Origin: Camelus dromedarius
Lineage: Eukaryota
DNA: 64,000 bases
Direction: 5' to 3'
Assembly: GCF_036321535.1 (NCBI RefSeq)
Contig: NC_087452.1
Span: forward strand, 33,418,001-33,482,000
Below the pieces are notes generated by a model that was not told the DNA's origin, made no database searches, and worked only from the letters and a program-made list of their open reading frames with translations. Shown in pieces: positions 32,301 to 60,300 of this stretch; the first letter of the stretch is position 1, and every line of letters begins with the position of its first letter. Both the position numbers and the translations under genes were made by a program.

Positions 32301-35231
32301 TGGCTCAGAAACCCTGTGAGGGCTAGGACAGGTGGGTTCAGGGCCTGGTGGGGGCCAGTCCTGAGAGTGATTCCCTTCCCAGGCTGGATGAGTCATTCAC
32401 GGTCAAGGTGGCTGATTTTGGTCTGGCCCGCGACGTCCTGGACAAGGAATACTACAGTGTCCAACAGCACCGCCACGCTCGCCTACCTGTCAAATGGATG
32501 GCTCTCGAGAGCCTACAGACCTACAGATTCACCACCAAGTCTGATGTGGTAAGGCCCCACCTGCCCCAGGGCCCACATTGCTTCAGCGTCCTGGGAGGAC
32601 ACTCAGCCTGGACTTGCCCATTAGCTCCGGACGATGATCTGAGTCCAGGGAATTCCCTAGCTGGGCAGCACCCCCAGCCCATTTGCCCACCTCTGGGCAG
32701 GTGTCAGGGCAAGAGAAGGCTATGAACTCCAGACAATCTGGGCCCTGCCCAACACCAACTTTGGGCAGGCTCAAGTGGTGGGTGGGGACAGAGGGAAGAC
32801 ATTGGTGAGGTTTTGAGGAATGGGCTCTGATTGGGGGGTCAAGCCCCTCCATTCCAGCTAGAGGGCTCTGAGAGGTAGAGGAGCTGGGGGGACCCACCTG
32901 TCTCTAAATTTGGGGTAAGAGTTGAGTCCCTTCACCTCTCTTCTCCCACAGTGGTCGTTTGGTGTGCTGTTATGGGAGCTGCTGACACGGGGTGCCCCAC
33001 CATACTCCCACATTGACCCTTTTGACCTTGCTCACTTCCTGGCCCAGGGTCGCCGCCTGCCCCAGCCTGAGTATTGCCCCGATTCTCTGTGAGTATGTGG
33101 AAGTGGTGATGGGGAGTGAGCTAGGCCCCAGAGACAAGAAAGGGGCTGGAGACAGAGTCCTTGCCTTACTCTTTGCCTGATTCTCTGGCTGACCTGGAAA
33201 AGGACCCTCTCTGGGCCTCAGTTTCCTCATCTGCAGATTGGTTCCACCCCTATTCGGGGCTGGGTGCTGGAAGAATATCACAGTTGCCATGGTAACAGCA
33301 TTTCCTAACTCAGTCTGGATTGAGGCCAGTGATTTGATTTCCCAGCACTCCTCTCCACCCACCCCCACCAAGGGGGGCTGTTTTCCATCTTTTCCTCTTT
33401 CTTAACCTCAAGGAAATGTTCCATTAGCTCCCACACTAGCCCCTCCCCCTCCATCAGCAGATCAGATTTTTTTTTCCACTGGATATAGTTTTAGATTGCC
33501 TGTTCCCAGAGGTATGATGGCCGCTGTGTTTCATCAGTGCCTGATGGGTGGTTTTGGTGCCCAGGTTCAGCTTCATAAGCAGCACACATGCCTCAGCTGT
33601 GCTGAAGTCTCTGGTTAGAACAGGAAGAACACAGGTAAAGGTGGTTGATGAGTCCTATCCAATCTGTGTTCCAGAAGGGTATGAGTAATCCTTCCTCACT
33701 GCCCTGCCTGCCTTGGGTTTGCTCTTTATTATTTACATCACTAATGTGTCTGATTCAAAGTAAGGGAAATTAGGGGGAGGGTATATCTCAGTGGTAGAGT
33801 GTGTGTTTAGCATGCACGAGGTCCTGGGTTCAATTTCTAGTATGTCCACTTAAAATAAATAAATAAACCTAATTCCCTCCCCCTGCAAAACAAAACAAAG
33901 CAGAAAACAAAGTAAAGGAAATTAACTTCACTGTCTATTTGCCTCTATTGCAGTCTCCCTAAACAGACTCTGAGATGGAGATTTATGTGCAGAGGGTTTA
34001 TTGGTAGACTGGGGGTGAGAGAAGCAGGACTAGGCAGGGGAAGAAGTTGGCCTGTGATGCAGATGCAACAGAAGCTACAGCCTATGCCCTGGAAACCTCT
34101 GACACTGGAAAGGCCCTTCAGAGTTTTCTGAAATTGAGATCAAGGGGCCCAGCTATTTGCACCAGACATCAATCAGTCACTGGTCACAGCTGTCCCTGAG
34201 GAAGGAGTGTGAACTTGGAGGAGGCATTTCTTTTCTCCCTAGGGCAATTCCTAGACAGGGCCTCAGCCAAGAGCCATCAGCAGCCACAGGCAGAATAAAG
34301 GGGGGTATCTGGGTGGCACACCACAGCATCCTCTATTTCAGGGCAAGTCCCTTCTCTCTGGGCCTCAGTTTTTCTCATCTGGAAAGTTGGAATGATAACA
34401 GTCCCACCTTCAGAGGGTCTAAAAATTATACGAGATTATTGTGTGTAGGGCAATTGTAGTATCATTTAAGGCAGGGATAATATTTCCAAGATAAAGGCGG
34501 ATGTATTAGGACTCACCCGACAAACCCAGAGACACTTGCTTGGGAACCATGGTGCTATGTGCTGCCCCACACATCTCAGGCTTTTTAATCCCCAGATCTG
34601 GGCTTCCTTCCTGGAAGATATGTGATGATAACCACGATAGCTTGTGAGTTGGGCCCTAAGCTAAGACCTTCACAGGCATCCTCTCACCTTATGCCCCAAT
34701 AGCTCTGTGATCAGAGAAGGATCCAGAGGCACAGAGTTAAGGAACTTGCTCAAGATCACATAGCCCAGGTCACAGGGCACAGGAGCCCCCTGACACAATT
34801 CAACCTTGCCAAGTTGGGAAGGAGAAGAGCTGCCCCTAATTGGGCGATGCAAGGCACCAGGTCCTGTCACCTGCCCTCACCCCTGTGTGGCCTGCCGGGT
34901 GGTAACAGCAAGCAGATGGACCGGAGTCTCTGGGTGCAGTGCACCATGCTTCTGACGTTTTCCTCCACTCGGTAGGTATGCAGTGATGCAGCACTGCTGG
35001 GCTGCAGATCCTGCAGCAAGACCCACCTTCGGAGTGCTGGCAGGGGAAGTGGAGCGCATGGTCGCCACGCTGCGAGGAGACCATTACGTGCAGCTGCCCG
35101 TGGCCTATGTGAACGTGGGTCCTGGCACCTCTGACAAGGCAAACCTGTCATCGGAACAGTCGCCGTCCCCTCCAGTGCACAGGAGCACAGGGCGGCCCCG
35201 GCCCCTCTCAGAGCCACCAAGGCCCACGTGA
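22910..35231 (+). CDS. MST1R: Macrophage-stimulating protein receptor RON (MET-family receptor tyrosine kinase), 1400 aa
   Basis: 20 exons: 22910-24142, 27006-27194, 27269-27397, 27576-27746, 28060-28220, 28569-28734, 28847-28983, 29414-29575, 29671-29764, 29921-30130, 30232-30378, 30459-30621, 30773-30874, 30950-31156, 31514-31594, 31739-31920, 32014-32123, 32383-32548, 32952-33088, 34976-35231. Total 4203 nt = 1400 aa + stop. Shows a signal peptide, Sema domain, furin site KRRRR (23825-23839), PSI/IPT domains, TM helix from 30531, [20 protein letters not shown], activation loop KEYY and docking site YVQL..YVNV. Confidence 0.97.
26567..26580 (+). promoter_or_regulatory. Candidate CTCF site in MST1R intron 1
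   Basis: CCAGCAGGGGGCAG is a full match to the CTCF core CCASYAGRKGGCRS. Confidence 0.5.
26600..26770 (+). mobile_element. MIR relic in MST1R intron 1
   Basis: aaacctctgtgagccagtttccttctctgtaatatggggg...aaggctgtgagga. Confidence 0.55.
33283..33296. promoter_or_regulatory. RFX X-box (GTTGCCATGGTAAC) in MST1R intron 19
   Basis: Near-palindromic 14-mer matching the RFX consensus GTTRCCATGGYAAC. Confidence 0.65.
33773..33907 (+). mobile_element. Young tRNA-derived SINE (vic-1-like), copy 4
   Basis: Same head and body. 17-bp TSD caaagtaagggaaatta (33756-33772) / caaagtaaaggaaatta (33908-33924). Confidence 0.9.
33935..34330. mobile_element. MLT1-type MaLR LTR relic
   Basis: aaacagactctgagatggagatttatgtgcagagggtttattgg...gaagcaggactaggcaggggaagaagttggcctgtgatgcag resembles MLT1I/J-type LTRs. 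Confidence 0.55.
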
Positions 35232-40263: not shown

Positions 40264-40277
40264 GTTGCCATGGTAAC
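40264..40277. promoter_or_regulatory. RFX X-box (GTTGCCATGGTAAC)
   Basis: Identical to the 14-mer at 33283. Confidence 0.65.
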
Positions 40278-42959: not shown

Positions 42960-42973
42960 GTTGCCATGGCAAT
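42960..42973. promoter_or_regulatory. RFX X-box (GTTGCCATGGCAAT), probable ACTL11 promoter element
   Basis: One mismatch from the perfect palindrome GTTGCCATGGCAAC. It ends 38 nt before the ORF ATG. Confidence 0.65.
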
Positions 42974-43011
42974 GAAGTGGGGGCAGGGCACCTAGGGCAT
43001 GGAGCAGGACT

Positions 43012-46000
43012 ATGGAAGTCACCAAGAAAGTGGGGGACCCTGATCCATCGGGCCCCCAGGGCCACCCCTTGGCTGGTAGCCAGCAGCTGGGGGGTGGCCT
43101 TAGAGGGTCCCAGGGACCCTGGATAAACTCAGGATCTGTATACTTGAGGCAGGGTTTGTCACTGTCCACCGAGGCCATCACTGATGGGGCCTATGGCCCA
43201 GCCTCCCAGACCCACACCCCCAAGCCCACTCACCAGCAACTCCAGGACCCTGCTGAGGTTAGCTCCCAATGTGGCTGTGAGCAGGCCTCCCAGGATGCCC
43301 TGACCCTCTCCTCCACTAGCCCGTTTCCAAGCCCCGTCGTGGGAGCCCAAACACATCTCATCATGGAGAACAGGACCCTGGCCTTACCTGTGTGCACGCG
43401 CAGTGACGGTACCAGTGACATGGCCCAGCACGGACTCTGCTGCTCCCGGCTTCAGGTGCAGATTTCGGGGGAGGGCAAGGCTCCAGCTAAAGTTCTAGTA
43501 GGCTGGGGCAGAGGCCCCTGCAGCCCTGATCAGATAGCCCCAATGGGCATTAGAAAGAGCCGGTGGCTACCCTATTTTCTTCCAGGGGAGGATGGCTCAG
43601 CTGCAGCCCAAGTTCCTCTTCTGGCCCCAGTGCAAGATCAGGGCCAGGACAAGTGTCCATGTCCAACTCAGGCTCCTCCAGCTTCAACTCAGGCAAATAT
43701 TCCAGCTCTGGATACAACCCCAATATCAGTAGCAGTTGAAACTTACACCTGCAACCTCGACCCCCTGACTAATACTAATGCCATCACCAAGGACCTGTCC
43801 CAAGACCTCTTGCCCAGGAATTATGGCAATCAATGGTCAATCTACTCGGAGTCTTCCAAAGGGGTCACATCCTGCCAGGACAAAGTGAATTTCCATTCTC
43901 AGAATGAGCCTCCCACCCCAGCACCCACTCCAAATCAGTCCCCAGACCAGGCCCAGGAGCTCGAGGTTGCCAGAAGGCTTGTGTTACCCAAGCAGCCTGA
44001 AAACCAACTGGAGAAGCCCCTGGTCTGTACCTCCAGGCCAAGCAGCCCAAAACCAGGCTCAGGGCCCCTAGGGACCCCCAAGTCCCAGAGGGGTAGCCAG
44101 GAGATCTGCAGCTCTCAGCCATATCAGCAGCCCTTCAATGTTTGCGACAACACCTGCTCCAATGTGCCCCTGTCTGCCCACCAAGTAAACTACCACAAGC
44201 AGTCCCCAGCAGAGACTCCCAGGGAAGCCATGCAGATACCCCTCTCCAGTGCCCCTACCTGTCAGCTCCAGGATGCTGTAGAAGACCGTGTGCTGGTGTT
44301 TGATATGGCCACAGGCAATACCAGGATGGGGCTACTGTGCCATGACCCCATGGGCTCACCTGCAGTGCTGGTGGGCCTCATGCCCAGCCACTCATCCATC
44401 CGTGCCTCTGAAAATCTTCTGTCTACCCGGCCATTGGCCATGCCCATTCTCTCCCCTGACAGCAATCGCTCCAGCCTCTGGTCTACCACGCCCATGGTGT
44501 CCAGCCCTGTGCCCTCTAGCCTTTCATCTGGAAGCTACCGAGAGGTGGCCCTGGTTCCCAAGGAGGCCAGGGTCAACCTGGAGTCAGTGGACTCCCCTGG
44601 TACTGAGACACCCATCAGGATGGGGATGCTCACTGGGCCTATTCCACTGGGGATGCCCCTCCAATTTGGAGAGAGGACACTTAGCCATGCCCATGGTCCT
44701 GGCTGGTCCAAACCTGATGCTGAAAAAAATGAAGCTAGTCACACCATCTGGATGCTGGATGCCTCCAGGATGCAGGATACCTCTATGGTCCAGGCCAAGA
44801 AATTGCAGTGGATGAACTCAGAGCAGAGCCCAGAGTATGTACCACCAGCCAAAACCCAGGATGTGCCCAGACCCCAGCTCCAGAAGGATGTAGGCAGCAA
44901 CAGTCAGAAAGAGGTCATTACTCCTCATCCTGACCACCCTCAGGTCCAAGATGCTGGGCAGGGTCCCCTCGGTGGTCAGCCCCCACTAGCCGAACAGTGT
45001 ACCCTAGCCAGACAGCCCCCTTCAACCAGTCAGCCTCCTTCTGCAGAGCACTGTCCCCACACCAGGCAGACCTACCTTTCGGGACAGCCACCCCTAGCTG
45101 AGCAGGCCCCCTCCACCAAGCGGACTTGCCTTCCTGGTCAGCCCCCTCTTCCTGGGACACCTAATGGCAGGCAGCTTTCTCTCACTGGGCAGCCTCCCTT
45201 TTCCCAAGTGCCTCCCACCTCCACTGTGCCTACCCTCTCAAGAGGGCCCCCTGCCACTAGGGAACCTGGTCAGGCCTCCACCTTGTGCCAGGAACATGAG
45301 CCCTTGGGCCACCGTACCCACGTGGGGGTGGTTCGGGTGCCCCTGCCCCCTGAGGAGACCTGTGTCTCTGTGAACAGAGAAAAAGTTGGTGCCAGTGCTA
45401 CTCAAAGCTCCAGCACACATCAGCTCTCATCCTGGCAACCTGGCTGCTCCCCCAGGGCCCAAGAGGCACAGCTGTCCCTGATCCCATTCACCACATCTGG
45501 CACTGGTTGCAAGGTCTTGCCCATGGCCATGGTGGGCCCTGAGCCCCAGGGTCCCCGGTTCAAGCTGACAGCTGAGGACATTACACACTCACCAGTGGTC
45601 GCACACCTTGGTCTGCTCCGAGGGGCCTGCTATGAGCTGGTGCCCACCACGAACACCCTGCCAGTGCAGTCCCCAGTGCTCTGCCGCCACTCTCTGGGCC
45701 CCTACCAGGACATGGCAGCTGTGGTGATCGACACAGGCACAGGCTTCACCAAGTGTGGACTGGCTGGAGAAGACCATGTCCTGAGTGTAGTGCCCTCACG
45801 CGTACAGCTGCTCCAGCACCCGGTTCAGGGCCAGCCCAGGTATGCAGTGCCTGAGAAACGAGAGGGCTCTTACTCAGTGCTGAATCGAGGAGTGGTCTCC
45901 GACTGGGATGCGCTGGAGGTGCTGTGGCAGCACCTGTTCTACTGCAGGCTGGGTGTGCGGCCCGAGGAGCTGGCGGTGCTGGTAGCTGACTCACCCATCT

Positions 46001-46764
46001 CACCGCGCACCAACCGAGAAAAGGTAGCTGAAATACTCTTTGAGCGTTTCCATGTGCCAGCCATGCAGACGGTGCATCAGGCCCTGCTGGCGCTCTATGC
46101 TTATGGGCGCACCACTGGGCTGGTGCTGGGCAGTGGCCATGGCACTTCCTATGTGGCGCCCATCATCACTGGGGATCTGGCCCCACTGGACACCTACCGG
46201 CTGGATGTGGCTGGTGCTGACCTCACTGAATACCTGGCTCAGCTGTTGTTGGCAAGTGGCCACTCACCACCCAAGGCAGAGCTGGTCAACCAGATTAAAG
46301 AGGCTTGCTGCTATGTGGCCATGGACATGACAGCCGAGATGGCCCGTGCCCAGGCCCAGGCCCGGGTGGACTTTGTGCTTCCAGACAAGCAGGTCATCAC
46401 GCTGGGCTCTGAGCGCTTCTGCTGCCCCGAGGCCCTCTTCCAGCCCAATCTGCTAGGCTTCAATCAGCCAGGCCTCCCACAACTAGCCCTCCTAAGTATT
46501 AGCCGGCTGGAGACCAAGCAGCAGGAGCAGCTGCTGGCTAATGTGGTGCTGGACGGTGGTAGCACCCTGTTGAATGGCTTTCCTGAACGCCTGAGACAGG
46601 AACTGGGCCCTTGTGCCACTGTACTGGGCTCTCCGCACCGTGCTGTTGCTGCTTGGCTCGGAGGTTCCATCATGGTGTCCCGAGACTCCTTCCAGAGCCT
46701 GTGGCTCAGCCGCCATGAGTACGAGGAGGAGGGCCCATGGGCCATCTACAAGTACCATCTGTGA
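43012..46764 (+). CDS. ACTL11: Actin-like protein 11 ortholog, single exon, 1250 aa (long low-complexity N-terminus plus C-terminal actin fold)
   Basis: Uninterrupted 3753-nt ORF with ATG in a strong context (actATGg). Residues about 901-1250 align by eye to actin (AVVIDTGTGFTKCG, WDALEVLW, HQALLALYAYGRTTG, ERFCCPEALFQP, VLDGGST, WLGGSI, EYEEEGP). Its position between MST1R and CAMKV matches mouse Actl11 / human ACTL11P as I recall. An alternative start ATG at 43363 is also in a strong context. Confidence 0.88.
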   Translation: MEVTKKVGDPDPSGPQGHPLAGSQQLGGGLRGSQGPWINSGSVYLRQGLSLSTEAITDGAYGPASQTHTPKPTHQQLQDPAEVSSQCGCEQASQDALTLSSTSPFPSPVVGAQTHLIMENRTLALPVCTRSDGTSDMAQHGLCCSRLQVQISGEGKAPAKVLVGWGRGPCSPDQIAPMGIRKSRWLPYFLPGEDGSAAAQVPLLAPVQDQGQDKCPCPTQAPPASTQANIPALDTTPISVAVETYTCNLDPLTNTNAITKDLSQDLLPRNYGNQWSIYSESSKGVTSCQDKVNFHSQNEPPTPAPTPNQSPDQAQELEVARRLVLPKQPENQLEKPLVCTSRPSSPKPGSGPLGTPKSQRGSQEICSSQPYQQPFNVCDNTCSNVPLSAHQVNYHKQSPAETPREAMQIPLSSAPTCQLQDAVEDRVLVFDMATGNTRMGLLCHDPMGSPAVLVGLMPSHSSIRASENLLSTRPLAMPILSPDSNRSSLWSTTPMVSSPVPSSLSSGSYREVALVPKEARVNLESVDSPGTETPIRMGMLTGPIPLGMPLQFGERTLSHAHGPGWSKPDAEKNEASHTIWMLDASRMQDTSMVQAKKLQWMNSEQSPEYVPPAKTQDVPRPQLQKDVGSNSQKEVITPHPDHPQVQDAGQGPLGGQPPLAEQCTLARQPPSTSQPPSAEHCPHTRQTYLSGQPPLAEQAPSTKRTCLPGQPPLPGTPNGRQLSLTGQPPFSQVPPTSTVPTLSRGPPATREPGQASTLCQEHEPLGHRTHVGVVRVPLPPEETCVSVNREKVGASATQSSSTHQLSSWQPGCSPRAQEAQLSLIPFTTSGTGCKVLPMAMVGPEPQGPRFKLTAEDITHSPVVAHLGLLRGACYELVPTTNTLPVQSPVLCRHSLGPYQDMAAVVIDTGTGFTKCGLAGEDHVLSVVPSRVQLLQHPVQGQPRYAVPEKREGSYSVLNRGVVSDWDALEVLWQHLFYCRLGVRPEELAVLVADSPISPRTNREKVAEILFERFHVPAMQTVHQALLALYAYGRTTGLVLGSGHGTSYVAPIITGDLAPLDTYRLDVAGADLTEYLAQLLLASGHSPPKAELVNQIKEACCYVAMDMTAEMARAQAQARVDFVLPDKQVITLGSERFCCPEALFQPNLLGFNQPGLPQLALLSISRLETKQQEQLLANVVLDGGSTLLNGFPERLRQELGPCATVLGSPHRAVAAWLGGSIMVSRDSFQSLWLSRHEYEEEGPWAIYKYHL

Positions 46765-47044
46765 GCACATAAAAGTTCTGGTTCTGCTTACTTTGACCAC
46801 TGTGGCACATTTTAGGCAGAGGGTGGTGGAGGGAAGGGCAGGAGTCCAGGCATGGGATCAGAGATGGAGGGCTTGGCACTCTCAAGGCACCCCCTGCTTC
46901 CACACACTGGAATTCCAGGGGCCTTGGCAAGCCTATCCCTTCCAGAGCCCCAGAGCCCCTTGCCTGGCACTGGCCCTGGTCTAACCTGACCTTTACTGCA
47001 CCCCAAGGGCAACCACAGAGAGTGGCTGCTGTGGGTTTTGCCCT

Positions 47045-47100
47045 GTTGCCCTGGCGACAAGCTCAATTACCCTTGATTGCCAGCTGGTTGCCATGGCAAT
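47045..47100. promoter_or_regulatory. Pair of RFX X-boxes downstream of ACTL11
   Basis: GTTGCCCTGGCGAC (47045-47058) and GTTGCCATGGCAAT (47087-47100). Confidence 0.6.
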
Positions 47101-47869
47101 TTCAAACATAATGTAATAACCCACACAGCCTGGAGTGAGTCATGAAGGGGGGGGAACAGCCCCCTCCCCTAGCTCCAGAAGAAAAGACTGCTTGCCTTCC
47201 CCCATCTTGGGCCCTCTATAAGGGGCTGAGGCCAGGAAACTTGACAACAGCCAAAGGGTTCCACAGATGGCTGGGAGCATTTGTTGCCCCCAAGGGAGGA
47301 TACCTGTCAGAGTCTGGACTTCTTGGGGAGCTGGCCTGGTAATGCAGGTACCACCTAAATTCTGAAGCTTGGCTGGAGCTCCATGCTGTGTTGGCAGGGG
47401 CTCTAGCAGCCAGTCAGAATTTGAAGGTATAGGAGTGCTGGCTTCTGGTGTCCTGGGGCAGGAAATCCAGGTAGTGGTGCAGATAAATCCTGGAACTTGG
47501 GTGAGAGGTACAACCTGAACTGGGGGAGGAGGCTCTGGCCTGCTTTGTAGTCTCTGTAGGTATGGAGGCTCACACCTAATCTTGTCTCTATCTAGCTCCA
47601 GTGGGAGCTGGAACTGTTCACTATGGGCTCCCTTCTCCTCTTCAGCCTCCCAACCCATGCAGCCTCTGCCCACAAGGAGGCTGGGGTGCAGGCCTCCTCG
47701 GGAGATCCTCATAGAGACTATAGGGCAATGCCAGTGCCAATGCCAACTGCCCCTGCTCCTGTCCTCAACTCCACCCTGTGCTGAAGGACCTCCCACCCTC
47801 CTTCTGGCCACGCAGGTGGCTAGAAATCATGGCCCCTGAACTTGTCTGGCTCTAAAAAGTACAGTGAGT

Positions 47870-47875
47870 AATAAA
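47870..47875 (+). terminator. Candidate polyadenylation signal (AATAAA)
   Basis: First canonical AATAAA I found after the ACTL11 stop, followed by GT-rich ctctgtgt. A variant CATAAA sits at 46768-46773. Confidence 0.45.
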
Positions 47876-57311: not shown

Positions 57312-60300
57312 ATGCCGTTTGGGTGTGTGACTCTCGGCGACAAGAAGAACTATAACCAGCCGTCGGAGGTGACCGACAGATATGACTTGGGACAGGTCAT
57401 CAAGACGTGAGTGCCGGGTCTGTTGGGCAAGGGTGGGCAGGCAAGGGCTGCGGAAAGGGGCACAGAATATAGCCCGTGCTGAGTGGAGTGCCTGCTGGCT
57501 GCAGTGAGGAGTTCTGTGAGATCTTCCGGGCCAAGGACAAGACGACAGGCAAGCTACACACCTGCAAGAAATTCCAGAAGCGGGATGGCCGCAAGGTGCG
57601 GAAGGCAGCCAAGAACGAGATAGGCATCCTAAAGATGTGAGTGTGAGGCCTGGGGGTGGGGTGAGGTAGGGTAGGGGAGGCAGCAGGTAAGGGCTTCAAG
57701 GGCTGGTAGCTTCAAGCAGTACCAGCCTCTGGCTAGTTAGTCTGCTGTGGTCCACAGTGGCAACCAGAGCCTCTCTTAGGAGTTTACCCAGCCCTAACTA
57801 TTGGCTCTCCTCTCTGCTGCTAGGGTGAAGCATCCCAACATCTTGCAACTGGTGGATGTGTTTGTGACCCGCAAGGAGTACTTTATCTTCTTGGAGCTGT
57901 GAGTGTGGGTCTGGGTTTCCGGGATTACTCAGTCCCCAGGGTCTTTACCTGCTCTGCCCTCTGCAGCCGGGGAAAGCCCCTCCTTCTGGATCCTTGGGGT
58001 CTCAGGTCTCTGTGCCTTGCCCAGCCAGCTGCCTGGTGTAGGCAGCCTACCCACATGCTCCTGCCCTACCCCCAATTCTGCCCACGCCGGGCTCAGGGGC
58101 TGGTGTCCTTCAGGGCCACGGGGAGGGAGGTGTTTGACTGGATCCTGGACCAGGGCTACTACTCGGAGCGAGACACAAGCAACGTGGTGCGGCAGGTCCT
58201 GGAGGCAGTGGCCTACCTGCACTCACTCAAGATCGTGCACAGGAACCTCAAGGTGAGGATAGTAGCCAGGTCAAAGGGTCAGGAGGCAGCCGGCCTGGGG
58301 CTGGGATGGGCTGCACCTTGGGGCCTTGGTCCAGCCTCTGAGATTTCCATGGTGTCTTCCTCTGCCCACCCATATGCCATTCCTGGCCTGAGCAGCTGGA
58401 GAACCTGGTTTACTACAATCGGCTGAAGAACTCAAAGATCGTCATCAGCGACTTTCACCTGGCTAAGCTAGAGAATGGCCTGATCAAGGAGCCCTGTGGG
58501 ACCCCCGAGTACCTGGGCAAGCAGGGGGTGGGGCAGGGCAGGGTGGGAGACAGCCTTTAAGGAGTGGCTCTGGGTAGGGGGGAAGGAAGTCCCCATCCCA
58601 GGAAATGGATGTGAGTGGTACAAGGCCTGGCCAGGCCTGATATTGACCAGCAGGTGGACACTGTTTGCAGCCCCGGAGGTGGTAGGCCGGCAGCGATATG
58701 GACGCCCTGTGGACTGCTGGGCCATTGGAGTCATCATGTACATCCTGTAAGTGGATGAGCCGGCAAACAAGCTTGCAGCCAGATGGGGTGGGGGGTCTGT
58801 GTCCATGGCCTTCCAGTGACCCTGCCCTTGGCCCTCCATGAAGGCTTTCAGGGAACCCACCTTTCTACGAGGAGGTGGAGGAAGATGACTATGAGAACCA
58901 TGATAAGAATCTCTTCCGCAAGATCCTGGCTGGCGACTATGAGTTTGACTCTCCATACTGGGATGACATTTCTCAGGCTGGTGAGGAGACCTGCTCTCAG
59001 CCTTCTCTGATGGACTCTGATCCTAACCCCCAGCCCAATCATCCCCTCTAGACAGTGAGATGGGGTGCCCATGTCTAGCTCTCTCTGGTTTTCTCCCCAG
59101 CCAAAGACCTGGTCACAAGGCTGATGGAGGTGGAGCAAGACCAGCGGATCACTGCGGAAGAAGCCATCTCCCATGAGTGGTGAGCAGGGCCCGGGAAGGA
59201 TGGGAGGAGAGGCCAGGGTTCCCTTGGCCTCTGTCCTCCTCGCACTTAGCAGCCTCCATACTTGAGGCCTCGAGTTGGGGTTGGAAGGGCACCCAGAGCT
59301 CAGGCCAGCCCAGAGGGTCTGCCTGGTAATCCCTTGATCTTACAAGGGAAGGGCTGGGTACAATCTCCATGAAGGCCATACTCCTTCAGATCCAGACGCA
59401 CTTGCACTCTTTCCAGGATTTCTGGCAATGCTGCTTCTGATAAAAACATCAAGGACGGTGTCTGTGCCCAGATTGAAAAGAACTTTGCCAGGGCTAAGTG
59501 GAAGGTAAGGCTTGGATGCCTCCCTTTTCTGGCTTGATCTCAAGAGCTCTTTCTGGCGCCATAGTTTTCTTGCCTGCATCACATCCCTGTAGCCACACAC
59601 AGGCTTTTCTTCAAACATCAGGTGTAGCTGGAGCCACTGTTACTACTTGAAGCAGGTGTGCTGAGCAGCTGGGTTCCTGGCCTTGGGGTGGTCAGAGGCA
59701 GCCGGGGCACTATGGAATGGTCTGGGTTTGGCCTCTGGGGAAGGAATGGATACAGCTTCCATAAGCTTCACTCTGAGCCTCTATCCACTGTCCTTTCAGA
59801 AGGCTGTCCGAGTGACCACCCTCATGAAACGGCTCAGGGCACCGGAGCAGTCCAGCACAGCTGCAGCCCAGTCTGCCCCAGCCACAGACACTGCCACTCC
59901 TGGGGCTGCAGGTGGGGCCACTGCTGCAAGTGGAGCTGCCCCAGCTCTTGGGGGCAGTGCCATCCCAGCCACAGTGGGTGATGCTGCAAAGAGNNNNNNN
60001 NNNNNNNNNNNNNNNNNNNNNNNNNNNNNNNNNNNNNNNNNNNNNNNNNNNNNNNNNNNNNNNNNNNNNNNNNNNNNNNNNNNNNNNNNNNNNNNNNNNN
60101 NNNNNNNNNNNNNNNNNNNNNNNNNNNNNNNNNNNNNNNNNNNNNNNNNAGCTACTGATGGGAGAGCCACACCAGCCATGGAAGAGAGCACCACCCAAAG
60201 CAGTGCCACACCGGCCACCAAAGCTGCTGCCACCCCTGGGCCGGCTTTAGCCCAGCCGGACAGCACAGCCCCAGGGGGCGCAACAGGCCAGGCTCCACCC

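What the first reader, a model, noticed from the sequence alone, without database searches (positions are those of the whole stretch)
43012..46764. Intact giant actin-like protein (ACTL11), a gene annotated as a pseudogene in human
Seen: a 1250-codon intronless ORF with no stops, made of about 900 aa of Pro/Gln/Ser/Thr-rich sequence fused to a complete C-terminal actin fold of about 350 aa. Knowledge as recalled: human ACTL11P is a pseudogene, mouse Actl11 is testis-expressed and barely characterised, and other testis actin-like proteins (ACTL7A/B, ACTL9, ACTRT1-3) build the perinuclear theca and acroplaxome. Inference: an ORF kept open over 3.7 kb implies selection, making this a probable sperm-head scaffold with by far the longest N-terminal extension of the group, retained here and lost in the human lineage.
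Basis: partly seen in the sequence, partly recalled or inferred. Interest (0 to 1): 0.75.

Follow-up and report, generated by a model that had tools for sequence, protein, structure and literature searches.

The report
Camel ACTL11: giant sperm actin-like protein
This is the intact camel copy of ACTL11, a named but unstudied testis gene that joins a 900-residue floppy, phosphorylated tail to an actin-shaped domain that probably cannot form filaments; it is ordinary as annotation, but it is the one testis actin-like protein left out of current sperm biology.

Summary
Window 43012-46764 (+) is one uninterrupted 1250-codon ORF: about 900 aa rich in Pro, Ser, Gln and Thr and predicted disordered, followed by a Pfam Actin domain (aa 900-1246, E 1e-81).

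It is the camel orthologue of ACTL11. It is 99.5% identical to an annotated Camelus ferus protein and lies between MST1R and CAMKV, where human ACTL11P is reported. The gene is therefore already known, though functionally uncharacterised.

- **Selection:** omega is 0.16 in the actin domain and 0.63 in the N-terminus (both below 1, p < 1e-21). The ORF is intact in every placental order sampled.
- **Expression:** ten RNA runs from three studies, most labelled "reproductive system", hold the ORF. Pig ACTL11 is a heavily phosphorylated sperm protein. Mouse Actl11 is abundant in testis and falls 4.4-fold in Rfx2 knockouts.
- **Actin fold:** the phosphate loops are kept, but H161, D154, D157, H73, K336 and several filament contacts are lost. 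It most likely works as a non-polymerising Arp.
- **Ancestry:** a bird has a 370-aa positional orthologue. The giant tail is found only in therians, and at least one block is a decayed copy of the actin N-terminus.
- **Primates:** constraint looks relaxed across anthropoids, not only in humans.
- **Open point:** a sperm-head location is unproven, and a flagellar location is equally possible.

The scan had not reported this on other DNA.

The parts
42960..42973 (+). Palindromic RFX X-box (GTTGCCATGGCAAT), 39-52 nt upstream of the ATG; candidate core promoter element
   Evidence: Pattern scan. It lies in an 85-nt stretch that is nearly invariant in 8 placentals including mouse. Mouse Actl11 falls 4.4-fold in Rfx2-/- testis. 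Binding was not tested.
42973..42975 (+). In-frame TGA that closes the reading frame upstream of the start codon
   Evidence: The stop-to-stop frame begins at 42976. The TGA is present in 7 of 8 aligned placentals.
43012..43014 (+). Preferred start codon (A at -3, G at +4)
   Evidence: M1 is invariant in 33 orthologues. Residues 1-50 are 72% conserved with few gaps. Omega for aa 1-117 is 0.66, below 1 at p 0.003. RNA contigs hold 0.77 of the words of 43012-43362, and two species SNPs explain most of the missing words.
43012..46764 (+). ACTL11 coding sequence, single exon, 1250 codons plus stop
   Evidence: It differs at 10 nt (4 synonymous, 6 non-synonymous) from two Bactrian-type camel assemblies, with no frame change.
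43012..45708 (+). N-terminal extension, aa 1-899: intrinsically disordered, Pro/Ser/Gln/Thr-rich, a probable multi-site phosphorylation region
   Evidence: AlphaFold2 mean pLDDT is 29.6 and no residue reaches 70. No Pfam family passes threshold. There are 24 Ser/Thr-Pro motifs. Camel keeps Ser or Thr at 9 of 10 Ser sites phosphorylated in boar sperm. The profile finds only therian ACTL11 among 1.84 billion representatives.
43363..43365 (+).
   Evidence: It is internal to conserved coding sequence and to the RNA contigs, so it is the less likely start.
43477..43581 (+). Conserved island 1 (aa 156-190), found only in placentals
   Evidence: K160, V161, L162, G164, W165 and G166 are invariant, and 14 more residues are at least 90% conserved in 33 sequences.
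44254..44385 (+). Conserved island 2 (aa 415-458), shared with marsupials; weak three-strand beta prediction; resembles the actin phosphate-1 hairpin
   Evidence: Residues 426-450 are 91% identical across 26 placentals. Strands are predicted at 425-431, 436-443 and 452-456 with low confidence. hhalign pairs 428-441 with actin-domain positions 4-17, score 28.2, reached by 0 of 160 column shuffles. Marsupial match.
44500..44583 (+). Conserved island 3 (aa 497-524)
   Evidence: Residues 501-525 are 89% identical. S498, P499, P501, S502, S505, S508, Y509, L514 and L523 are invariant.
44962..45261 (+). Variable region with degenerate GQPP[LF] repeats (aa 651-750)
   Evidence: This is the least conserved part, 29-50% identity and up to 49% gaps. 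There is no tandem repeat at the DNA level. The only Pfam match is a sub-threshold Cementoin hit, E 0.059.
45517..45708 (+). Pre-actin block (aa 836-899), shared with marsupials; a decayed duplicate of the first ~40 residues of the actin domain
   Evidence: The marsupial counterpart aligns to the placental profile at positions 753-885, E 1e-13. In marsupials it matches the start of the protein's own actin domain: P0100:358-397 against P0100:423-463 scores 59, and P0109:142-169 against P0109:207-232 scores 54. In each case 0 of 300 shuffles of the whole N-terminus reach that score. In camel the similarity has decayed (p 0.56).
45709..46761 (+). Actin-fold domain (aa 900-1250): phosphate loops kept, hydrolysis and filament-contact residues replaced
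   Evidence: Residue table: D11, G13, G15, K18, Q137, G156, G158, G182, K213, E214 and G301-G302 are kept. The changes are D154G, D157H, H161Y, H73R and K336A; a D-loop shorter by 4 aa; deletions at actin 202-204 and 322-325; and D286E, D288K, R290Q and K291E. Nearly every one of these positions is fixed or almost fixed in 26 placentals. Omega is 0.14-0.16.
47045..47100 (.). Two further X-box matches 280-335 nt downstream of the stop (47045-47058 on the - strand, 47087-47100 on the + strand)
   Evidence: Pattern scan. Neither conservation nor function was tested.

Best explanation
The ORF is the functional camel orthologue of ACTL11, a single-exon gene between MST1R and CAMKV that is expressed in spermatids and ends up in sperm.

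Shown:
- The frame is intact and under purifying selection.
- RNA from reproductive-tissue samples holds it.
- The pig orthologue is a sperm protein phosphorylated at many sites of the N-terminal region, and those sites are conserved in camel.

Inferred mechanism, about 55% likely. The protein has two parts.

The C-terminal actin fold keeps the glycine-rich phosphate loops and the cleft scaffold, so it may still hold a nucleotide. It has lost the residues that activate water for ATP hydrolysis (H161Y, D154G, D157H) and the methyl-histidine position (H73R). The D-loop is shorter. Two contact loops are deleted and several charged longitudinal contacts are changed. It should therefore act as a non-polymerising Arp-type docking module that binds actin, other Arps or capping factors, not as a filament subunit.

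The roughly 900-aa N-terminus is a disordered, multiply phosphorylated tether. It carries four conserved islands that probably serve as short docking motifs.

Transcription probably starts just downstream of a conserved RFX X-box, 39-52 nt before the ATG.

Evolution. ACTL11 is an old vertebrate Arp of about 400 aa. The tail was added in the therian stem and doubled in placentals, while the actin domain changed fast and then froze. Whether the protein sits in the sperm head or in the flagellum is open.
For: Identity and synteny:
- 99.5% identity to Camelus ferus LOC102519592, with full-length orthologues named ACTL11 in horse and dog.
- The gene order on the + strand is MON1A, MST1R, ACTL11, CAMKV and the first TRAIP exon.
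- Human ACTL11P lies next to MST1R.

Selection:
- Nei-Gojobori omega is 0.137 for the actin domain and 0.47 for the N-terminus.
- Maximum-likelihood omega is 0.163 and 0.630. Likelihood-ratio tests against omega = 1 give 389 and 93.8.
- All 8 coding sequences fetched are open.
- Within Camelus there are 4 synonymous and 6 non-synonymous differences and no disruption.

Expression:
- Eight RNA runs of only 178-847 million letters, from two studies, hold 0.90-0.93 of the ORF's words. This equals the share expected from the 10 inter-species SNPs. A third study holds 0.33-0.70.
- Boar sperm ACTL11 has 27 phosphorylation events.
- Mouse Actl11 has a BaseMean of 4590 in P30 testis and log2 fold change -2.15 in Rfx2-/-.

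Structure:
- The N-terminus has pLDDT 29.6.
- The actin part folds as actin, TM 0.75 against beta-actin at 40% identity.

Ancestry:
- The tree clade has SH-aLRT support of 97, and the therian stem branch is 1.01 substitutions per site.
- The Rhea locus has the same gene order.
- The N-terminal profile is restricted to therians.

Promoter.
Against: - No direct evidence exists for camel protein, for localisation, for nucleotide binding or for partners.
- Omega of 0.63 in the tail is high, and part of the tail (aa 601-775) is poorly conserved.
- The reference used for actin numbering (P0136) is an insect actin-like sequence, not a verified canonical actin.
- The actin-domain model is only moderate (pLDDT 69).
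- Mouse RFX2 ChIP-seq did not call Actl11 as a direct target. Its drop at P30 could simply reflect the loss of late spermatids in the knockout.
Confidence: 0.7

Rival explanations
1. ACTL11 is a true filament-forming actin isoform that polymerises or co-polymerises with sperm actin, with the tail decorating the filament.
For: It is 40% identical to cytoplasmic actin over the whole fold. D11, K18 and Q137, the hydrophobic plug, and much of the barbed-face cleft (Y143, A144, G146, R147, T148, G168, I345, F352) are kept.
Against: H161Y, D154G, D157H, H73R and K336A are present. The D-loop is 4 residues shorter. Actin 202-204 and 322-325 are deleted. D286E, D288K, R290Q, K291E, Y169D and L349R are present. 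Nearly all of these positions are fixed or almost fixed in 26 placentals. Only 2 of 19 longitudinal-contact positions and 1 of 15 D-loop positions match the actin reference.
Confidence: 0.08
2. Only the actin domain matters. The 900-aa tail is a tolerated, drifting spacer with no specific function.
For: Omega is 0.63 in the tail. Disorder is complete. The repeat region varies in length. No domain or outside homologue exists. Non-mammalian orthologues do without the tail.
Against: Omega is below 1 at p 3.5e-22. The frame stays open for 900 codons in all orders sampled. Islands are 84-91% identical from camel to mouse and armadillo, and two blocks are kept to marsupials. The phosphosites used in boar sperm are conserved.
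Confidence: 0.12
3. The protein belongs to the flagellum or cilium-related cytoskeleton (fibrous sheath, outer dense fibres or connecting piece), not to the perinuclear theca.
For: In boar sperm its phosphorylation load ranks with AKAP4, FSIP2, ODF2 and AKAP3, all flagellar proteins. Mouse Actl11 is marked 'high stringency in CilDB' and follows an RFX2-like expression profile. RFX2 targets are enriched for cilium and flagellum genes. A conserved X-box sits at the promoter. The 2026 study that defines the sperm-head Arp complex does not mention ACTL11 in its text.
Against: All of this is indirect. Most other testis Arps sit in the head or acrosomal region. RFX2 knockout also disturbs acrosome genes. 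That study's supplementary proteomics were not available.
Confidence: 0.4
4. In camel the ORF is a transcribed relic on its way to becoming a pseudogene, as in anthropoid primates.
For: Anthropoid gene models are truncated and carry 5.8-7.3% changes at columns that are invariant in other placentals, so loss does happen in this gene.
Against: The camel sequence keeps every placental-invariant column by construction of the set. Its end branch in the tree is 0.019. Three camel assemblies are intact. At least ten DNA runs hold 100% of the words. The within-genus ratio of changes fits omega near 0.5.
Confidence: 0.02

Closest known systems
ACTL11 / Actl11 (actin-like 11) of horse, dog, pig and mouse; human ACTL11P
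   Same: Collinear over the full length at 60-83% identity. It has the same single-exon structure, the same position between MST1R and CAMKV, and the same two-part layout.
   Different: Nothing of substance differs; this is the camel member. Camel databases call it an 'uncharacterized protein'. Anthropoid copies are truncated and relaxed.
Testis actin-related proteins ACTL7A, ACTL7B, ACTL9 and ACTRT1-3 (the sperm-head Arp complex)
   Same: An actin fold of about 36-40% identity, intronless coding sequence, expression in the male germ line, and presence in mature sperm. ACTL7A and ACTL7B also have N-terminal extensions.
   Different: Their extensions are 40-70 aa, against 900 aa here. ACTL11 is no closer to them than to beta-actin. 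It forms its own vertebrate-wide clade and is absent from the published complex. Its location is unknown.
Conventional cytoplasmic actin (ACTB, ACTG1)
   Same: The same fold. The P1 loop, Q137, K18, the G-rich P2 backbone, the adenine-pocket glycines and the hydrophobic plug are kept.
   Different: The catalytic and filament-contact residues are replaced or deleted, identity is 40%, and there is a giant disordered N-terminus.
Non-mammalian 'actin-3-like' or 'actin-1-like' proteins of about 370-420 aa (birds, reptiles, amphibians, coelacanth, sturgeon)
   Same: About 50% identity in the actin domain. They share the lineage markers DTGTG, G-x-G-T-S-Y (H161Y) and the short D-loop. In Rhea the gene lies between MST1R-like and CAMKV-like genes.
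   Different: They have only a 25-60 aa N-terminal tail. They keep H73, Y169, L349, the HRHCF C-terminus and the loops that therians deleted. No trace of the camel tail is found in their flanks.
POTE-actin chimeras of primates (own knowledge, not tested here)
   Same: A long non-actin N-terminal part fused to a C-terminal actin domain, with expression in testis.
   Different: POTE genes arose when an actin retrogene inserted into an ankyrin-repeat gene, and their N-terminus is folded. Here the N-terminus is disordered, is found only in therians, and is at least partly derived from the gene's own coding sequence.

Membership tests
Actin / Arp superfamily (Pfam PF00022) | Profile match above the curated threshold across the whole domain | tested here: met
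   275 bits against a cut-off of 27; profile positions 3-406 of 410.
Actin / Arp superfamily (Pfam PF00022) | Actin fold in three dimensions | tested here: met
   The AlphaFold2 model (pLDDT 69) matches beta-actin with probability 1.00, TM 0.75-0.82 and rmsd 3.7-3.8 over about 372 residues.
Conventional polymerising actin | Residues for ATP hydrolysis: Q137, H161 and D154, and the methylated H73 | tested here: not met
   Q137 is kept, but H161Y, D154G, D157H and H73R are present. H161Y, D154G and H73R are fixed in all 26 placentals; position 157 is His in 22 of the 26 and never Asp.
Conventional polymerising actin | Intact D-loop and longitudinal contacts between subdomains 3 and 4 | tested here: not met
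   The D-loop is 4 aa shorter with 1 of 15 positions identical. Actin 202-204 and 322-325 are deleted. Only 2 of 19 contact positions are identical.
Conventional polymerising actin | Polymerisation and ATPase activity | not testable with these tools
   This needs purified protein.
ACTL11 orthologous group | Collinear full-length similarity to proteins named ACTL11 | tested here: met
   100% query coverage at 77-80% identity to horse and dog ACTL11.
ACTL11 orthologous group | Position between MST1R and CAMKV on the same strand | tested here: met
   MST1R exons lie at 22.5-35.2 kb, ACTL11 at 43.0-46.8 kb and CAMKV at 57.2-60.4 kb. Human ACTL11P is reported beside MST1R. Rhea has the same order.
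ACTL11 orthologous group | Single-exon coding sequence | tested here: met
   The genomic ORF is uninterrupted in camel and in 7 other placentals, alligator and Rhea.
Sperm-head (perinuclear theca) Arp complex | Expression in testis or spermatids and presence in sperm | tested here: inconclusive
   RNA runs labelled 'reproductive system' hold the ORF. Pig sperm protein and mouse testis RNA come from papers.
Sperm-head (perinuclear theca) Arp complex | Location in the subacrosomal layer and binding to ACTRT2/3, ACTL7A/B, ACTL9 and CAPZA3 | not testable with these tools
   The defining paper has no mention of ACTL11 and its supplements are not held.

The most novel reading that the evidence does not exclude
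ACTL11 is an ancient vertebrate Arp of about 400 aa that was rebuilt in the therian stem. Its own 5' coding segment (the actin phosphate-1 hairpin region) was duplicated in tandem at least once and decayed into a disordered, phosphorylated tail that grew to 900 aa in placentals. Over the same period the actin domain changed by about one substitution per site, lost its catalytic and filament contacts, and then froze. On this reading it is the overlooked ninth testis Arp, RFX2-dependent and possibly flagellar, and missing from human-centred studies because anthropoids have lost it.
Probability: 0.3. Interest if true: 0.55.

Novelty: already known. Interest (0 to 1): 0.38.

Why it matters
ACTL11 is annotated and named, so the window adds no new gene.

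Its value lies in what is missing from the literature. Only five papers among about 8.4 million searched mention it. A 2026 study that claims to characterise all testis-enriched Arps omits it, probably because the human copy is a pseudogene.

Yet it is conserved across placentals, abundant in mouse testis, and among the most phosphorylated proteins of boar sperm. That makes it a ready knockout and localisation target in mouse or livestock.

It is also a clean case of a folded ancient domain acquiring a giant disordered tail, in part from its own coding sequence. For fertility genetics in camels, pigs and cattle it is a candidate gene that human-based gene panels would miss.

Tried and rejected
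- **Read laying:** Transcript start, end, strand and splicing were therefore not seen.
- **DNA not obtainable:** Dasypus and Macrotis DNA could not be fetched because the files were too large.
- **Alligator locus:** no called neighbours and no MST1R or CAMKV exons lie within 10 kb, so synteny was tested in Rhea instead.
- **Pfam on the N-terminus:** nothing was found except a sub-threshold Cementoin match, E 0.059.
- **Tandem Repeats Finder:** there is no DNA repeat inside the ORF.
- **ESM Atlas on aa 405-600:** the best score was 0.86, below the useful level.
- **hhalign of A2 against A1:** it returned only the trivial 60-aa overlap of the two alignments, so it was redone on cut alignments.
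- **Camel pre-actin block against the camel actin start:** not significant, p 0.56. The duplication is visible only in marsupials.
- **Placental N-terminus against the non-mammalian profile:** borderline, with 5 of 120 shuffles reaching the top score.
- **A whole degenerate actin copy inside the tail:** not supported. Only short collinear motif matches were found.
- **Overlapping +1 frame ORF at 44288-44815:** treated as a chance frame.

Full report
**1. Observation**

The ORF listing returns a single ORF at 43012..46764 on the + strand: 1250 aa with an ATG start. Stop to stop the frame is open for 1262 codons from 42976. The next longest open frame in the window has 552 codons. At the local base composition about 3.3% of random codons are stops, so such a frame has a chance of roughly 2e-19 per start (own arithmetic).

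Residues 1-899 are 12.8% Pro, 10.8% Ser, 8.3% Gln and 7.5% Thr. Pfam finds one family, Actin PF00022, at aa 900-1246, E 1e-81. The best solved structures are cytoplasmic actins, E 4e-86.

**2. Identity and neighbourhood**

The protein is 99.5% identical (6 differences) to 'uncharacterized protein LOC102519592' of Camelus ferus. The window therefore comes from a camel.

Full-length orthologues of 1170-1295 aa occur in Cetartiodactyla, Perissodactyla, Carnivora, bats, Eulipotyphla, rodents, lagomorphs, a colugo, strepsirrhine primates, Xenarthra and Afrotheria. Horse and dog entries are named ACTL11.

All of the following lie on the + strand of the window:
- MON1A longin exons at 15.4-18.4 kb and the MST1R Sema exon at 22.5-24.2 kb
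- further MST1R exons up to about 35.2 kb
- ACTL11 at 43.0-46.8 kb
- CAMKV at 57.2-60.4 kb
- the first RING exon of a TRAIP-like gene near 63.2 kb

A preprint places human ACTL11P beside MST1R at chr3:49.88 Mb. Gene, name and position are thus already known.

**3. Selection**

Coding DNA was fetched for seven other placentals, and all are open single exons.

| Region | Pairwise Nei-Gojobori omega | Codon-model omega, GY+F3X4 on the species tree | Likelihood-ratio test against omega = 1 |
|---|---|---|---|
| Actin domain | 0.137 | 0.163 | 389 |
| N-terminus, aa 1-899 | 0.47 | 0.630 | 93.8 (p 3.5e-22) |
| aa 1-117 | 0.54 | 0.659 | 8.6 (p 0.003) |
| Whole ORF | 0.365 | 0.473 | 324 |

Against two Bactrian-type camel assemblies the window differs at 10 nt, 4 synonymous and 6 non-synonymous, with no frame change. 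At least ten DNA runs from three studies hold all sampled words.

**4. Expression and translation**

Eight RNA-seq runs from two studies hold 0.90-0.93 of the ORF's sampled words in their assembled contigs. A third study holds 0.33-0.70. Most of these runs are labelled 'reproductive system'.

The runs contain only 178-847 million letters. That is far too little for stray genomic DNA to assemble a 3.7-kb stretch, so the words must come from an abundant transcript. The 10 inter-species SNPs predict a share of about 0.92, which means the contigs cover essentially the whole ORF.

The segment between the two candidate start codons is held at 0.77 in the same runs. The two SNPs in that segment explain most of the missing words.

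In boar sperm, ACTL11 (I3LJA4) carries 27 phosphorylation events and ranks with AKAP4, FSIP2, ODF2 and AKAP3. The listed sites run from Ser85 to Ser822, all in the N-terminal region. All ten Ser sites are Ser in P0002, a 1250-aa protein that is probably the pig one, and camel keeps Ser or Thr at nine of them.

In mouse, Actl11 has a BaseMean of 4590 in P30 testis and falls by log2 -2.15 in Rfx2-/- testis (P 1e-10). It has an RFX2-like expression profile, was not called in ChIP-seq, and is flagged 'high stringency in CilDB'.

Transcript ends, strand and any 5' non-coding exon therefore remain unseen.

**5. Start codon and promoter**

Several lines favour ATG 43012:
- M1 is invariant in 33 orthologues.
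- Residues 1-50 are 72% conserved with few gaps.
- Residues 1-117 evolve as coding sequence.
- The ATG has A at -3 and G at +4 and follows an in-frame TGA at 42973-42975.

The 85 nt before the ATG are almost invariant from camel to mouse. They contain a palindromic X-box at 42960-42973. RFX2 targets carry X-boxes within -500 to +50 of the start site and are enriched for cilium and flagellum genes. ATG 43012 is therefore preferred to 43363. An RFX-driven spermatid promoter is a reasonable inference, but it is not proven.

**6. The actin domain**

The AlphaFold2 model (pLDDT 69) superposes on beta-actin at TM 0.75-0.82 and 40% identity. ACTL7B is also 40% identical and ACTL7A 36%. No reviewed ACTL11 entry exists.

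Numbering is by an actin-like reference in alignment A1.

Kept:
- D11, G13, G15, K18, Q137, G156, G158, G182, K213, E214 and G301-G302
- most of the barbed-face cleft

Changed:
- D154G, D157H, H161Y, H73R, K336A, Y169D and L349R
- a D-loop shorter by four residues
- a six-residue deletion in subdomain 2
- deletions at actin 202-204 and 322-325
- D286E, D288K, R290Q and K291E
- the C-terminal HRKCF replaced by YKYHL

Nearly every one of these positions is fixed or almost fixed in 26 placentals. H161Y and the short D-loop are shared by the whole vertebrate lineage; the other changes are specific to therians. My reading is a constrained actin fold that may still bind a nucleotide but that neither hydrolyses ATP like actin nor makes canonical filament contacts. 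That is inference from sequence.

**7. The N-terminal region**

AlphaFold2 with 33 sequences gives mean pLDDT 29.6, and no residue reaches 70. The only secondary structure is a weak three-strand element at 425-456.

Conservation is 55-75% with few gaps, apart from aa 651-750 where degenerate GQPP[LF] repeats vary in number. Islands stand out at 156-190, 415-458, 497-524 and 851-898.

A profile of the region scored against 1.84 billion representative proteins finds only ACTL11 orthologues and fragments, one marsupial (E 7e-10) and three low-complexity matches.

**8. Ancestry**

A search with the actin domain alone finds proteins of 370-420 aa at about 50% identity in turtles, squamates, alligator, a ratite, frogs, salamanders, a caecilian, coelacanth and sturgeon. 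It also finds marsupial proteins of 559-778 aa.

In the tree these proteins form one clade with therian ACTL11 (SH-aLRT 97). ACTL10, ray sequences labelled ACTL7B-like, and actins fall outside it. The therian stem branch is 1.01 substitutions per site, followed by very short placental branches.

In Rhea pennata the 370-aa gene lies between a Sema-PSI-TIG-kinase receptor and a CAMKV-like kinase, followed by a RING gene, all on one strand. The camel MST1R, CAMKV and TRAIP exons match that locus in the same order. The short non-mammalian genes are therefore positional orthologues.

Their flanks hold no trace of the camel tail. Marsupial tails of about 425 aa share two blocks with the placental profile, at positions 437-620 and 722-891. 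Residues 1 to about 420 and 601-775 are placental additions.

**9. Origin of the tail**

Profile comparison pairs two stretches of the tail with actin hallmarks, in the same order along the chain:
- 428-441 with the actin phosphate-1 hairpin, score 28.2, reached by 0 of 160 column shuffles
- 767-792 with the PEE...NREKV segment

These matches are weak, with hhalign probabilities under 5%.

The clearer signal is in marsupials. The segment just before the actin domain matches the first 40 residues of the same protein's actin domain.

| Marsupial | Smith-Waterman score | Shuffles of the whole tail reaching it |
|---|---|---|
| Antechinus | 59 | 0 of 300 |
| Vombatus | 54 | 0 of 300 |
| Macrotis | 42 | p 0.083 |

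That marsupial segment is homologous to placental aa 836-899, where the similarity has since faded. At least this block is a decayed tandem copy of the gene's own 5' coding sequence. Wider claims about the tail's origin remain speculative.

**10. Primates**

Anthropoid gene models are partial:

| Species | Camel residues covered |
|---|---|
| Gorilla | 280-1185 |
| Saguinus | 222-1250 |
| Pygathrix | 1-842 |
| Plecturocebus | 1-785 |

Gorilla and Saguinus differ at 7.3% and 5.8% of the actin-domain columns that are invariant in 26 placentals. Nine control species differ at 0-3.1% and a loris at 0%. The changes hit structural glycines and R147, and several are shared between the two species. 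Relaxation therefore probably began in the anthropoid stem. This rests on annotated models and was not tested with codon models.

**11. Comparison with what is known**

This is ACTL11, so it is already known as a gene. Functionally it is nearly blank. Five papers in the searched library mention it. A November 2026 study presented as characterising all testis-enriched Arps (ACTRT1-3, ACTL7A/B, ACTL9, ACTL10, ACTL8) has no occurrence of it.

It works like an Arp, but it is not shown to belong to the sperm-head Arp complex. The indirect hints point at least as much to the flagellum: its company in the pig phosphoproteome, the CilDB flag and its RFX2 dependence.

**12. Verdict**

It is unproven on sperm-head location, and it overstates how special retention in camel is. 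Interest is moderate: an ordinary annotation, but an overlooked, conserved and abundant sperm protein with an unusual evolutionary history.

Noticed in passing
That is more conserved than the coding sequence. It could be a 5' non-coding exon, an enhancer or part of another transcript. MST1R coding exons end some 7 kb further upstream.
   Followed up: partly
window 33283-33296 and 40264-40277: Two identical perfect palindromic X-boxes (GTTGCCATGGTAAC) lie in or after the 3' part of MST1R, in addition to those at 42960, 47045 and 47087. This agrees with the other first-stage note on an X-box cluster around ACTL11.
   Followed up: partly
P0101 (Bos) and L007 (Hipposideros): Public gene models in this region are unreliable. 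A Bos UniRef entry fuses the last 279 aa of ACTL11 to CAMKV. In the bat, a 469-aa RING-finger (TRAIP-like) model spans the whole ACTL11 locus.
   Followed up: no
L001 (Eschrichtius robustus): The grey whale protein is annotated with 1227 aa, but the genomic stretch is an open 1250-codon frame like the camel's. The annotation probably trims it without need.
   Followed up: partly
window 59994-60149: A run of 156 N lies inside the last, repeat-rich coding exon of CAMKV. It was left as it is.
   Followed up: no
window 46765-47870: No AATAAA or ATTAAA occurs for 1.1 kb after the stop codon; the first is at 47870. The 3' end of the mRNA is therefore undefined and may use a non-canonical signal.
   Followed up: no
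L009 (Rhea pennata) 1-21113: The gene order MST1R-like, ACTL11-like, CAMKV-like, TRAIP-like, all on one strand, is conserved between a ratite bird and camel, within about 20 kb in the bird.
   Followed up: yes
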